A stretch of 63,750 nt of DNA, counting the filler, from Lenisia limosa (taxonomy: Eukaryota > Protista > Breviatea), in the NCBI GenBank assembly GCA_001655205.1. It is 15 parts of 15 records of this genome, joined end to end, with 100 filler letters (N's around TTAATTAATTAA, not from the genome) between each part and the next. Parts side by side here need not be neighbours in the genome. Positions count along the whole stretch, not along the records: positions 32,462 to 35,102 come from LPNZ01003681.1; 14 more parts are not named here. One strand, given 5' to 3'. A program made the position numbers and the translations under genes. This document shows, in pieces, positions 32,131 through 35,374 of this stretch. The notes under the pieces were generated by a model. That model did not search any database. It saw only the letters and a list, made by a program, of their open reading frames with translations, and was not told the origin of the DNA. Each line of letters starts with the position of its first letter. Position 1 is the stretch's first letter.

Positions 32131-32506
32131 CAATGTTGGGGGAGGGTAATCTGTAGTTAAGTGATAAAAGTGGTATCTTTTATGACCAAAATTAAAAAAA
32201 ATAAAGGTAAATTTGCTTGCTTCAGAATACCTGGATAATGAAGACAATGCTTGGGGTAATCCACTGTACAGTATAATTCGGGGTAATTCAATGTAATAGT
32301 AGTATTCATTGCTCTCAAAACATCACATAATCACCATTACCCTTCTCCAATCTGGTTTTTGNNNNNNNNNNNNNNNNNNNNNNNNNNNNNNNNNNNNNNN
32401 NNNNNTTAATTAATTAANNNNNNNNNNNNNNNNNNNNNNNNNNNNNNNNNNNNNNNNNNNNGGGGGTATAAGTAACAAATGAGACAAGTATTGTATGCTA
32501 GGTCAC

Positions 32507-34459
32507 CTTGTCGAGAGAAGTGATGATGGCGGTCTTGCCGGACTTCTCAGCGAAGCGGGCGGCAGCCTCAACCTTGGGTCCCATGGAGCCCTTGCCTGTA
32601 GCTGTAAGCAACGCAATCCAAAAAAAAAACAGGCAATCAATCAGTTGTGGGTGTGAAACGTAAAATGCCAACATAACAATACATAAACGGTCGGCTCTAG
32701 TCATACTATACCTCCCCAGAAGCGACTGGCCTGCCGCCCCCTCCCACCGAACTGGCCCTCAGCCATGAAGGCGCGGGCCTCGTTGACGGTCATGTGGCCG
32801 ATGGCGCGCTGGGTGGGCTTGTTGTAGTCAACAAAGACGGCCTCGACATCGGTGAGGATCATGTAGTGGTCGGCTGAGATGGTGTTGGCCTATAGAAAAG
32901 TAAGGACTTGCTCAGCTTCTTCACGAAAATAAAACAATATTCCCCTCTCACAAGAAGTTCACCGCAGAGATCCTTGTCGATGACGGCGTTGACACCCTTG
33001 AGCTCGCCGTTCTCACGGACAACAGGGATTCCACCGCCACCGCAGGAAACGACAGTCATGCCGTTGTCAATCATCTTGGTGATGGACTTGCCCTCAACAA
33101 TCTCGCGAGGCATGGGGGAGGGGACGACAATGCGGTATCCGCGGCCGGCGTCCTCGATCATGTCGAAGCCCTGGCGCGTTAAAATGTGTAGAAATGAGAA
33201 TGGAAGGTTTGGTCCAGTTAACATCAAGAGGACGAGAAGAGCCCCATGCCGACCTTGGCCTTGATCTCCTTGGACTCCTCCTCGGTGTAGAAGCGACCAA
33301 TAGGCTTGGAGGGGTTCTTGAAGGCGGCGTCTGTGGTGTGAGAGACAACGCAAAATATGCTGAGGGGAAAGGAAACAAAACACAACAAATGATTCGTATA
33401 ACAGTATATCATATTAAATAGGGAAAGCCTCAATAACTAATAAGAAAGCACCCCTCACCAGCACGGGTGACAACAGTCTGGGTGACGACACAGGCAACCT
33501 CGGGGTCGGCAATGTGAGCCTTCTCCATGGCGGTACGGAGTTCCTGGGGGGGGGGGGNNNNNNNNNNNNNNNNNNNNNNNNNNNNNNNNNNNNNNNNNNN
33601 NNNNNNNNNNNNNNNNNNNNNNNNNNNNNNNNNNNNNNNNNNNNNNNNNNNNNNNNNNNNNNNNNNNNNNNNNNNNNNNNNNNNNNNNNNNNNNNNNNNN
33701 NNNNNNNNNNNNNNNNNNNNNNNNNNNNNNNNNNTGCGAGGGAAATTAAGACCAACGACAGTTATTTTAAATGAAAAGGTGAAAAGCATAAATATTTCCC
33801 AAAAGTCATCATCAGCACCACACTTCTTCAAAGATTTCTCATTTACTATGTGAAACTCACCTGCTGGATCATGAAACCGATGAAACCTTGAGTCATGGCA
33901 CCGTTGACGAAGAGGGGCTGTTGGGGGACCTTCTCCTTAGCAACGTCTCCCTGGAGGAAGAGGGCGCCGACCTAATGTGGTGAGTCAAGCCCTTACTTAC
34001 AATTAGGGCTTCACTTCGGTTCAAAAAAAGACTGTAAATCCTTGAAGACTAACGATATTTTACCAGTCTTTTCGAACCGAAGTGAAGCCTAACTCACAAT
34101 CGGACATTCAGGTGTTAGACATTAAACTCGGAACCACTTTGATGTCTATCTTGCTAAAAAGATTGACCCCCCCCCGCCGCCAACCTGGGGGCCGTTGCCA
34201 TGGGTGACGACGAGCTTGTTGCCGGCCTTGATGATCTTGGTCAGCTGCTCAGCGGCCTCGCGGGAGGCAGCGGTTTGCTCCTCGTAGGTACCCTGCATGG
34301 TCAGCAATGGTCTTTGATGAATCAATTTAAACACAGGCATTGGTTGGTCATTCTGCTACATAGCTTACCTTCTGTCCGGGCTTGAGGAGGGCGTTGCCAC
34401 CAAGAGCGCAGAGGATGGTCTTGGAGGTGGTTGGCTTGGGGATGGCGTCCATGAAGAAG
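32507..34459 (-). CDS. arcC: Carbamate kinase; probably the C-terminal half of an OTC-CK fusion; last exon lost at linker
   Basis: Exons 34369-34459, 34185-34292, 33861-33971, 33459-33543, 33254-33330, 32952-33170, 32748-32889, 32507-~32595 splice in phase. Motifs [92 protein letters not shown]. Confidence 0.97.
34004..34092. mobile_element. hAT-like MITE family A1 in a CK intron
   Basis: TIRs present; flanks CTTACAAT / CTCACAAT. Confidence 0.8.
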
Positions 34460-34484
34460 CTGCCAGTGTGAGTAAGGGCACAAC

Positions 34485-34583
34485 TAGGGATTCCCTACGA
34501 TCCCAAAAAGACTGAATTTCGCGATAAATCCTCAATAAATATCGATATTTGACTGATCTTTTTTGGACCGTAGGGAAGCCCAA
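34485..34583. mobile_element. hAT-like MITE family A2 inside the OTC-CK junction intron
   Basis: TAGGGATTCCCTACGATCCCAAAAAGAC...TTTTTTGGACCGTAGGGAAGCCCAA; flanks GGCACAAC / GGCACATA. Confidence 0.8.
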
Positions 34584-34661
34584 GGCACATAAGAACATAA
34601 TGAGTTTAGAGACAACAAATGAGAAATACGAGAGTACAACGATCACAGTGCCTGGACCCAC

Positions 34662-35069
34662 AGAGTGATGGCCTTCTGCATATGGAGGCGGTTGCCGGCC
34701 TGACGGAAGACGATGGAGGCGGGGCCGTCAATGACCTCAGCGGTTTGCTCCTGGAATGTGTCAAATACATACAAAGGACAAAATATTTGCAGTAAAGTCT
34801 CTCTTGAAACTAGGATCATAAGGAAGCACAAACCTGTCCGCGGGCGGCGGGGAGGCAGTTCATGAAGGTGCAGCTAGGCTTGGCAATGTCCATGAGTTCT
34901 TGGCGGACCTATGCGATGAAAATTGCCTTTTGAAAAACAACATAAAACTTGAAATAGCCTTATTGGCAAAACCATTAAATTATATCTTGATAGCATCGCA
35001 ACCATGCACCTGGAAAGGAAGGAAGACCTCGAGACGCTGCTTCTTCTCTTCCTCGGGGATGTGGTAGGA
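34662..35069 (-). CDS. arcB: Catabolic ornithine carbamoyltransferase, C-terminal part (Giardia/metamonad type); 5' part lost at linker
   Basis: Exons 35010-35069 [20 protein letters not shown], 34834-34908 [25 protein letters not shown], 34662-34750 [29 protein letters not shown]; all GT-AG and in phase. Confidence 0.93.
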
Positions 35070-35374
35070 CTATACTGCGTAAGAATGGTTGGCAATGCTT
35101 TCNNNNNNNNNNNNNNNNNNNNNNNNNNNNNNNNNNNNNNNNNNNNTTAATTAATTAANNNNNNNNNNNNNNNNNNNNNNNNNNNNNNNNNNNNNNNNNN
35201 NNTTGTGAGGGTCCTGCGTTCTACCCCCGAAAGTCTTGTAGACGGCCTCAGGCAAAAGGAGCTTGTCACCAAGTATATCATCACTAGGGCAAAGGTTGGA
35301 ACAAAATAGAGACACTTTTTTCAGGATCAGAATATCTATTACATATGATCTTATCTGGGGATGAAGTAAGTATA

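What the first reader, a model, noticed from the sequence alone, without database searches (positions are those of the whole stretch)
32507..35069. Probable in-frame fusion of catabolic ornithine carbamoyltransferase and carbamate kinase (one bifunctional ADI-pathway enzyme)
Seen: the OTC exon 34662-34750 ends ...ATC ACT CT|GTGGGT, and a CTTACTCACACTGGCAG| acceptor at 34460 opens C TTC TTC ATG GAC. This 202-nt GT-AG intron (phase 2 on both sides) gives one ORF: ...[38 protein letters not shown]..., and every other intron in both halves is phase-consistent. About 99 nt of the interval is a MITE, leaving roughly 100 nt, which is little room for a 3' UTR, polyA site and promoter. From memory, Giardia OTC ends ...AGNRLHSAMAVLDFFLHD, so the FF-M-D gained only by splicing lines up with the natural OTC C-terminus. 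Established: OTC makes labile carbamoyl phosphate, which CK converts to ATP; the two are normally separate (arcB, arcC). Inference: a fused, possibly channelling, ATP-generating enzyme. I do not know of a described OTC-CK fusion but cannot check this.
Basis: partly seen in the sequence, partly recalled or inferred. Interest (0 to 1): 0.9.

Follow-up and report, generated by a model that had tools for sequence, protein, structure and literature searches.

The report
Spliced OTC–carbamate kinase fusion gene
In this protist, a 202-base intron joins the last two enzymes of the arginine-to-ATP pathway into one protein, but the same fused enzyme is already annotated in several other anaerobic protists, so it is a new member rather than a new kind.

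Summary
On the minus strand, a GT..AG interval of 202 nt (34661-34460) lies between the last OTC exon (34750-34662) and the exon that opens the CK (34459-34369). Removing it gives one open frame of 382 codons across all 11 exons in the piece.

RNA supports the splice. A polyA-RNA contig stops exactly at 34662. Depth arithmetic places its remaining 54 nt at 34459-34406 (within 1 nt), and no RNA covers the read-through stop at 34643-34645.

The splice rebuilds the conserved end of the OTC's last helix: L-F-F-M, where relatives have [VL]-[FY]-L-[LM]. So the supposed CK start codon encodes a conserved OTC residue.

The spliced product aligns end to end with about 27 fused OTC-CK proteins at 50-56% identity. 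These come from Mastigamoeba, Mastigella, Pelomyxa, Carpediemonas, Barthelona, Cantina, Paulinella and Reticulomyxa. In Pelomyxa the junction lies in a single exon.

The assembly gap is inside an intron that the RNA contig bridges.

The fusion is therefore real (about 0.8) but not new: two public records already name it a fusion. Two points remain open: whether a CK-only transcript also exists, since CK contig depth is 30-70 times that of OTC, and whether carbamoyl phosphate is channelled.

The parts
35010..35069 (-). OTC exon (the OTC N-terminal part lies outside the piece)
   Evidence: GT-AG bounded and in frame. An RNA contig is laid on 35015-35069 with a loose end going upstream at 35069.
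34834..34908 (-). OTC exon carrying the FMNCLPA motif
   Evidence: Pfam OTCace positions 101-124, E 1.5e-4. The family's invariant C-L-P-A is kept.
34662..34750 (-). Last OTC-only exon, ending ...[10 protein letters not shown] + CT of a split Leu codon
   Evidence: Pfam OTCace 35.2 bits against a 29.4 cut-off. PDB OTCs match at E 2.5e-8. RNA record 2 covers 34753-34662 and stops at 34662.
34460..34661 (-). 202-nt phase-2 intron inside the OTC last helix / linker. It holds the read-through stop TGA 34643-34645.
   Evidence: GTGGGT...CTTACTCACACTGGCAG. GC is 0.43 against 0.60 in exons. No RNA depth on 34598-34661.
34484..34584 (.). MITE inside the linker intron
   Evidence: 28-nt inverted arms, 86% complementary. 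DNA contig depth 5,983-66,424 against about 27 in the flanks.
34369..34459 (-). Exon encoding the end of the OTC helix (F-F-M), the roughly 9-aa linker and the CK N-terminus (ALGGNALL)
   Evidence: Aligns with the junction of 27 fused proteins. Residue 9 after the Met aligns with residue 4 of Giardia CK 3kzf. By depth arithmetic, 54 nt of RNA record 2 lie on 34459-34406.
34185..34292 (-). CK exon 2 (THGNGPQ)
   Evidence: RNA record 1 junctions; frame.
33861..33971 (-). CK exon 3
   Evidence: RNA record 1 junctions; frame.
33544..33860 (-). Intron containing the assembly gap 33558-33734
   Evidence: RNA record 1 skips 33543 to 33861. L001 adds 118 nt of non-coding sequence into the gap.
33459..33543 (-). 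CK exon 4
33254..33330 (-). CK exon 5
32952..33170 (-). CK exon 6 (GGGGIPV, IDKD)
   Evidence: A phmmer search of 1.84 billion proteins gave 617 hits at E<=1e-10; those examined further are carbamate kinases.
32748..32889 (-). CK exon 7
   Evidence: Pfam AA_kinase E 1.7e-3 on this fragment.
32507..32595 (-). CK exon 8 (GSMGPK). The last CK exon lies beyond the piece.
   Evidence: The RNA loose end at 32506 reads on as ...K-AVAALEGKCG.
34007..34089 (.). Second MITE copy, in CK intron 33972-34184
   Evidence: 21-nt inverted arms, 95% complementary. DNA depth up to 51,051.

Best explanation
The locus is one gene for a bifunctional ornithine carbamoyltransferase-carbamate kinase. It belongs to the fused OTC-CK family already annotated in several mostly anaerobic or microaerophilic protists.

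A 202-nt GT-AG intron (34661-34460), which has picked up a MITE, interrupts the codons of the OTC's last helix. Splicing joins ...KAIT-L to [25 protein letters not shown]. The OTC helix is completed by the first three codons of the downstream exon, and about 9 residues then lead into the first strand of the CK.

Inferred function: the OTC domain phosphorolyses citrulline to ornithine and carbamoyl phosphate, and the tethered CK domain converts carbamoyl phosphate and ADP to ATP. The tether gives 1:1 stoichiometry and proximity for a labile intermediate.

Shown: the gene structure, the spliced RNA junction (indirectly), family membership, and conservation of invariant residues. Inferred: the catabolic direction, channelling, and the oligomeric state.
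For: 1. RNA. Contig record 2 (153 nt, depth 4.8) matches 34753-34662 with no mismatch and ends exactly at the predicted donor. No loose end is listed there.
- The bin 34331-34419 reads 105.3. That equals 26 nt x 357.8/89 (104.5, the value seen in a bin that holds 26 nt of record 1 alone) plus 14 nt x 4.8/89.
- This places the remaining 54 nt at 34459-34406, within 1 nt.
- The bin 34598-34686 reads 1.35, which equals 25 exon nt x 4.8/89. So no RNA lies on the stretch that holds the read-through stop.

2. Splice signals. The donor GTGGGT has G at +5, as do 9 of the 10 introns here. The acceptor is preceded by CTTAC/CTCAC, and 6 of 10 introns have CTNAC within 20 nt of the AG.

3. Helix motif. 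Over 84 standalone and 27 fused relatives, the four residues after KAxxL score +4.5 bits for the spliced F-F-M-D and -1.7 bits for the read-through W-V-Q-A. Giardia OTC 3grf has F-F-L at the same register. The AlphaFold model of the Carpediemonas fusion puts this motif inside the last OTC helix (288-308), followed by a 7-residue link to CK strand 316-321.

4. Collinear alignment. The spliced product aligns 1-382 in one piece with fused proteins at up to 56% identity (P0152, Mastigella), and the top 27 hits are all fused. Each full-length one carries OTCace_N, OTCace and AA_kinase.

5. In Pelomyxa schiedti, residues 300-426 across the junction lie in one exon.

6. The window product keeps 60 of 62 invariant and 56 of 63 near-invariant family columns on both sides of the junction.
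Against: - The junction itself was not printed by read laying (the table was truncated). It rests on depth arithmetic from a single low-depth contig in a single small RNA run.
- Both halves would also be plausible alone. The read-through ending [10 protein letters not shown]-stop resembles bacterial-type OTC ends such as 4oh7 and 2i6u. An ATG sits 9 residues before the CK core.
- CK contig depth (358) is 30-70 times that of the OTC contigs (4.8 and about 12). That could mean additional CK-only transcripts.
- The CK phylogeny does not resolve whether this lineage was ancestrally fused.
- The OTC N-terminal domain and the CK C-terminus lie outside the piece.
Confidence: 0.8

Rival explanations
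1. Dual output. The fused mRNA is real, but most CK is made from a separate, much more abundant CK-only transcript that starts within or just after the linker intron. The locus would then yield both OTC-CK and free CK.
For: CK contig depth is 358, against 4.8 for the junction contig and about 12 for the upstream OTC contig. An ATG at 34452 would give a normal CK N-terminus. The intron carries a MITE that could supply promoter activity.
Against: - No RNA contig covers 34460-34500.
- The junction contig runs 54 nt (more than k-1) into the CK exon at a mean depth of 4.8. So the 5' part of that exon, including the ATG, is not abundantly covered. An abundant transcript would therefore have to start downstream of the ATG.
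- Contig depth is a whole-contig mean, and polyA libraries can be 3'-biased.
- The ATG codes for a conserved Met/Leu of the OTC helix.
Confidence: 0.15
2. Two separate tandem genes. OTC ends at TGA 34643-34645 and CK starts at ATG 34452. On this view the 34662/34459 junction is a rare cis-splice of a read-through transcript with no protein-level role.
For: An intact stop lies 16 nt into the interval. The read-through tail is acceptable for bacterial-type OTCs. The CK has its own ATG. The enzymes are separate in Giardia and the trichomonads.
Against: - The only RNA continuation detected from the OTC exon is the splice, and there is zero depth over the stop.
- The read-through would end 16 residues after the N of NRLH, whereas most standalone OTCs of this group run 30-35 residues.
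- W occurs at that helix position in only 3 of 111 relatives.
- About 89 nt would remain, once the MITE is discounted, for a 3' UTR, a polyA site and a promoter.
- No AATAAA-type signal lies in the interval.
Confidence: 0.07
3. The acceptor at 34460 is a spliced-leader trans-splice site of a polycistronic unit, and the observed cis-junction is a by-product.
For: A strong acceptor with a branch-like motif lies just upstream of an ATG, and the gene spacing is tight.
Against: No leader-like loose end is reported at 34459 in the RNA run. The junction contig continues unbranched for 54 nt past the junction. Nothing in the piece indicates SL trans-splicing.
Confidence: 0.02

Closest known systems
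Annotated fused OTC-CK proteins of protists. Examples: Carpediemonas membranifera KAG9393713.1 / AMQ24245.1 (P0176, 624 aa, 'fused Aspartate/ornithine carbamoyltransferase and carbamate kinase'); Mastigamoeba balamuthi m51a1_g3115 (P0151, 637 aa); Pelomyxa schiedti (P0155, 643 aa). Also Mastigella, Barthelona, Cantina, Paulinella and Reticulomyxa.
   Same: - Same domain order, OTC then CK.
- Same junction register: ...NRLHxxKAxxL-F-x-[LM], then a short linker, then (R/K)xhhhALGGNAL.
- 46-56% identity in one collinear alignment for most members (42% for Reticulomyxa).
- 60 of 62 invariant residues kept.
   Different: - Here the junction is created only by splicing. A 202-nt, MITE-bearing intron sits inside the OTC's last helix, whereas Pelomyxa has the junction in one exon.
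- The linker is the shortest in the set.
- The intron keeps an in-frame stop 16 nt in, and the downstream exon keeps an ATG.
arcC-OTC (CK-then-OTC) fusion of anaerobic APM ciliates (PMC13198582, 2026). P0224 and P0229 have the same order.
   Same: Both put carbamate kinase and ornithine carbamoyltransferase in one polypeptide in anaerobic protists.
   Different: The domain order is opposite. P0224 and P0229 do not group with the OTC-CK proteins in either CK tree. Their OTC ends in the bacterial style, NRLHTIKAVMVATIG. The authors argue for a role in nitrogen assimilation, not the ADI pathway.
Separate catabolic OTC (arcB) and CK (arcC) of bacteria, Giardia (3grf, 3kzf) and Trichomonas (CBK_TRIVA, P0307)
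   Same: - Same two enzyme families.
- 51.5% identity to Trichomonas CK over about 295 aa.
- The OTC end matches Giardia's AGNRLH...FF[LM].
   Different: Those are two polypeptides from two genes. Here there is one spliced reading frame.
Pyrococcus furiosus carbamate-kinase-like CPS / OTC complex, reported to channel carbamoyl phosphate (recalled from memory, Massant et al. 2002; not checked here)
   Same: It is a precedent that CK-type and OTC enzymes associate physically so that carbamoyl phosphate is handed over directly.
   Different: That is a non-covalent complex working in the anabolic direction in an archaeon. Nothing of this kind was tested here.

Membership tests
Ornithine carbamoyltransferase (Pfam OTCace PF00185 / OTCace_N PF02729) | Asp/Orn-binding domain detected above the curated threshold | tested here: met
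   The last OTC exon alone scores 35.2 bits against a 29.4 cut-off and matches profile positions 126-156 of 157. PDB OTCs match at E 2.5e-8.
Ornithine carbamoyltransferase (Pfam OTCace PF00185 / OTCace_N PF02729) | (H/N)CLPA ornithine-site motif | tested here: met
   FMNCLPA is present in exon 34908-34834. C, L, P and A are invariant in the 25 fused relatives and are kept here.
Ornithine carbamoyltransferase (Pfam OTCace PF00185 / OTCace_N PF02729) | Carbamoyl-phosphate-binding N-terminal domain (STRTR motif) | not testable with these tools
   It lies upstream of 35102, outside the piece.
Carbamate kinase (AA_kinase PF00696) | Full-length similarity to characterised carbamate kinases | tested here: met
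   51.5% identity over about 295 aa to Trichomonas vaginalis CK (P0307, Swiss-Prot CBK_TRIVA) and 48-53% to many prokaryotic CKs.
Carbamate kinase (AA_kinase PF00696) | Pfam AA_kinase above the curated threshold | tested here: inconclusive
   Only single exons could be submitted. The best fragment scores 18.6 bits against a 24.9 cut-off. The spliced protein could not be passed to the tool.
Carbamate kinase (AA_kinase PF00696) | Conserved motifs ALGGNA, HGNGPQ, GGGGIP, IDKD and GSMGPK | tested here: met
   All are present in the spliced translation and coincide with invariant columns of the fused family.
Fused OTC-CK proteins of protists | One reading frame running from OTC into CK | tested here: met
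   An open frame of 382 codons after removal of GT-AG introns. The RNA contig ends at 34662 and resumes at 34459 by depth arithmetic. The junction was not displayed directly.
Fused OTC-CK proteins of protists | Collinear alignment across the junction with known fused members, in the same domain order | tested here: met
   A single BLASTP alignment 1-382 to 27 fused proteins at up to 56% identity. The junction motif is aligned.
Fused OTC-CK proteins of protists | Common descent with the other fused genes | tested here: inconclusive
   The first CK tree grouped the window with all 26 fused rows (80/87). Adding trichomonad, EukProt and chlamydial standalone CKs collapsed this to a polytomy.
Arginine deiminase pathway | Arginine deiminase present in the same genome, and catabolic direction of the OTC | not testable with these tools

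The most novel reading that the evidence does not exclude
The locus may be a switchable or transitional fusion. Intron removal gives OTC-CK. Intron retention would give a complete stand-alone OTC ending WVQAL-stop, and a start at ATG 34452 would give a stand-alone CK. The MITE-bearing linker intron would then let the cell set the ratio of fused to free enzymes, or it would mark a gene fission in progress. More broadly, the OTC-CK fusion family spans Amoebozoa, Metamonada, Stramenopila and Rhizaria. It appears only in database annotations, and none of the papers searched here describes it.
Probability: 0.12. Interest if true: 0.55.

Novelty: new member of a known kind. Interest (0 to 1): 0.33.

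Why it matters
For this genome, OTC and CK should be annotated as one gene whose junction depends on a 202-nt intron. A gene caller that stops at the first in-frame TGA would wrongly split it.

More broadly, OTC-CK fusion proteins turn out to be common in anaerobic protists of at least four major eukaryote groups, yet none of the papers searched here discusses them. A 2016 survey of the pathway does not mention the fusion, although its own Carpediemonas record is the fused protein. A 2026 paper calls the reverse-order fusion rare.

The fused enzyme is an untested natural candidate for direct hand-over of carbamoyl phosphate in substrate-level ATP synthesis. The fusion could also serve as a shared character for tracing how the pathway spread among eukaryotes.

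Tried and rejected
- I first leaned towards two separate genes, because the read-through tail matches bacterial OTC ends. I dropped this after the RNA evidence and the motif comparison with the proper eukaryotic OTC group.
- I guessed Monocercomonoides or Paratrimastix as the source. The published primers for their OTC and CK do not match this sequence. A Kipferlia literature search gave nothing useful. The organism remains unidentified.
- The first CK tree seemed to show that the window belongs to an all-fused clade. I withdrew that after adding standalone eukaryotic and chlamydial CKs.
- L001, an independent assembly, neither crosses the N gap nor reaches the last CK exon. Its sequence runs into long homopolymer tracts.
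- Pfam on single CK exons is too weak to be useful.
- Six literature searches found no paper describing the OTC-then-CK fusion.
Relatives were used instead.
Full report
**What is in the sequence**

The piece (32462-35102) is read on the minus strand. It holds three C-terminal exons of an ornithine carbamoyltransferase (35069-35010, 34908-34834, 34750-34662), followed by eight exons of a carbamate kinase (34459-34369 down to 32595-32507).
- All exons are bounded by GT..AG.
- Exons are 60% GC, with GC3 at 80%. Introns are 33-48% GC.
- The last OTC exon matches Pfam OTCace above threshold, and it matches solved OTCs.
- The spliced CK is 51.5% identical to Trichomonas vaginalis CK over about 295 residues.

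**The assembly gap**

The N run 33558-33734 lies inside the intron 33544-33860. A polyA-RNA contig (X1 record 1, 908 nt) joins 33861 to 33543 across it, and the frame stays open (...GFMIQQ|ELRTAMEK...). The coding sequence is therefore continuous. An independent ENA assembly contig (L001) is 100% identical over 33557-32462. It adds 118 nt of non-coding sequence into the gap but does not cross it.

**RNA evidence for the junction**

Only one read-laying run was allowed, and its joint table was truncated by thousands of MITE matches from the DNA run. The junction therefore has to be inferred.

X1 record 2 (153 nt, depth 4.8) lies on 34753-34662 without a mismatch and stops exactly at the predicted donor. 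Its first 7-10 nt belong to the previous exon, so it comes from spliced RNA. Another 54 nt remain, and no loose end is reported at 34662.

The depth table locates those 54 nt:
- The bin 34331-34419 reads 105.3. A bin holding 26 nt of record 1 alone reads 104.5 (33797-33885).
- The excess of 0.8 corresponds to 14 nt at depth 4.8. A 54-nt block with 14 nt at or below 34419 spans 34406-34459, within 1 nt.
- The bin 34598-34686 (1.35) is fully explained by 25 exon nt. No assembled RNA covers 34661-34598, where the read-through stop lies.

The boundaries are GT and AG, and there is no microhomology that would suggest template switching.

**Splice signals**

The donor GTGGGT has G at +5, like 9 of the 10 introns in the piece. 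The acceptor is preceded by CTTAC/CTCAC, and 6 of 10 introns have CTNAC within 20 nt of the AG.

**Which C-terminus is natural**

My first check favoured the read-through, because KAITLWV resembles the ends of two bacterial OTC structures. The proper comparison is with the eukaryotic OTC group to which this OTC belongs.

- In 84 standalone and 27 fused members, the helix reads NRLHxxKA-[LM]-[LM]-[VL]-[FY]-L-[LM]. W occurs at the aromatic position in 3 of 111.
- Most standalone members run 30-35 residues past the N of NRLH. The read-through would stop after 16.
- The spliced continuation F-F-M-D scores +4.5 bits against these columns. The read-through W-V-Q-A scores -1.7.
- An AlphaFold model of the Carpediemonas fusion (pLDDT 85.9, pTM 0.56) places this motif inside the last OTC helix (288-308). 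A 7-residue link follows, then the first CK strand (316-321).

The ATG at 34452 therefore encodes a conserved Met/Leu of the OTC helix. The intron splits that helix.

**Relatives**

A phmmer search of 1.84 billion proteins with the largest CK exon found the window's own product only as a 121-aa ORF fragment. It also found P0096, a 637-aa protein with OTCace_N, OTCace and AA_kinase.

Searching with the P0096 junction region returned about 30 such proteins of 620-670 aa. Named sources are listed below.

| Organism | Protein | Annotation |
|---|---|---|
| Mastigamoeba balamuthi | P0151 | 'putative carbamate kinase fused with ornithine carbamoyltransferase' |
| Mastigella eilhardi | P0152 | transcript ORF |
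| Pelomyxa schiedti | P0155 | 'carbamate kinase' |
| Carpediemonas membranifera | P0176 | 'fused Aspartate/ornithine carbamoyltransferase and carbamate kinase' |
| Barthelona sp. PCE and PAP020 | P0174, P0169 | hypothetical protein / transcript ORF |
| Cantina marsupialis | P0270 | transcript ORF |
| Paulinella micropora | P0175 | gene model |
| Reticulomyxa filosa | P0173 | 'Carbamate kinase' |

- The window's spliced product aligns 1-382 in one piece with 27 of them, at up to 56% identity.
- It keeps 60 of 62 invariant and 56 of 63 near-invariant columns.
- In the Pelomyxa genome, residues 300-426 (helix, linker and CK N-terminus) lie in one exon, so the fusion is fixed in DNA there.

**Phylogeny**

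A first CK tree put the window with all 26 fused rows (80/87). After I added trichomonad, EukProt and chlamydial standalone CKs, the backbone became a polytomy, with the window as a lone long branch. Common descent of the fusion is possible but not shown.

**Open point: transcript abundance**

The CK contig has a mean depth of 358. The junction contig has 4.8, and an upstream OTC contig about 12.

This could reflect 3' bias or an additional CK-only transcript. Against an abundant CK-only mRNA that includes the ATG:
- No contig covers 34460-34500.
- The junction contig runs 54 nt into the CK exon at a mean depth of only 4.8.

I cannot settle this with contigs.

**How it most likely works**

Shown here: one spliced reading frame that encodes both domains with their conserved residues intact.

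From established knowledge of the ADI pathway: catabolic OTC makes carbamoyl phosphate from citrulline and phosphate against an unfavourable equilibrium, and CK pulls the reaction by making ATP.

Inferred: the covalent tether fixes the stoichiometry at 1:1 and keeps the labile intermediate close to the second active site. True channelling and the oligomeric state are untested. OTCs are trimers and CKs are dimers, so a 9-residue linker constrains the assembly.

**Novelty**

The architecture is already in public annotation, so this is a new member of a known kind. Its particular feature is that the junction depends on a MITE-bearing intron inside the OTC helix.

I found no paper describing the OTC-then-CK fusion. 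The 2016 survey of the pathway does not mention it, although its Carpediemonas CK record is the 624-aa fused protein. A 2026 paper describes the reverse-order ciliate fusion as rare.

Noticed in passing
window 34484-34584, 34007-34089, and a partial copy near 34786-34823: This is a MITE family of about 80-100 nt with related terminal inverted repeats (GGGCTTCCCTACGGTCC... / GGCTTCACTTCGGTTC...). It sits in three different introns of this one locus. DNA contig depth over these stretches is 3,000-66,000 against about 27 in the flanks, which implies thousands of copies in the genome. Some copies are transcribed elsewhere (RNA loose ends at 34090, 34501, 34522).
   Followed up: partly
P0224 and P0229 (652 and 661 aa): These are reverse-order fusions, with CK at the N-terminus and OTC at the C-terminus. 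The order matches the arcC-OTC gene that PMC13198582 reports for APM ciliates and says has no similar sequences in NCBI nr. They come from JGI, NCBI and Logan sources.
   Followed up: partly
P0036 (796 aa), P0028 (766 aa): These are other CK fusions in public data. P0036 joins CK to a DcuC-type anaerobic C4-dicarboxylate carrier. From memory, that is the family of the ArcE arginine/ornithine exchanger, which PMC5300872 describes; this was not checked. P0028 joins CK to an LpxK-like region. They could be real fusions or gene-calling run-ons.
   Followed up: no
window 32506-34393 against 34406-35069, RNA run X1: Contig depth for CK exons 2-8 is 358. For the CK exon 1 / OTC junction contig it is 4.8, and for an upstream OTC contig about 12. 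A 12-nt hole (34394-34405) lies between the contigs. This is unexplained: it could be 3' bias, a CK-only transcript or an assembly effect.
   Followed up: partly
window 33546-33557; L001 1215-1300: Long homopolymer tracts flank the assembly breaks. There is a C12 run next to the N gap, and a run of tens of C and T just beyond the piece's lower edge. They probably explain why the assemblies break here.
   Followed up: no
PMC5052871 and GenBank AMQ24245.1 (P0176): The 2016 survey of eukaryotic ADI-pathway enzymes treats OTC and CK as separate markers and never uses the word 'fused'. Yet the Carpediemonas 'carbamate kinase' record listed with P0176 is the 624-aa OTC-CK fusion. Concatenated OTC+CK analyses may therefore have included single-gene fusions without noting it.
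   Followed up: partly
P0271 (329 aa, JGI contig of 1013 nt): This protein is annotated as a standalone carbamate kinase, but it begins MLYLLG..., which is the end of the OTC helix motif. It branches inside the fused clade. It is most likely an N-truncated fused gene on a short contig.
   Followed up: partly
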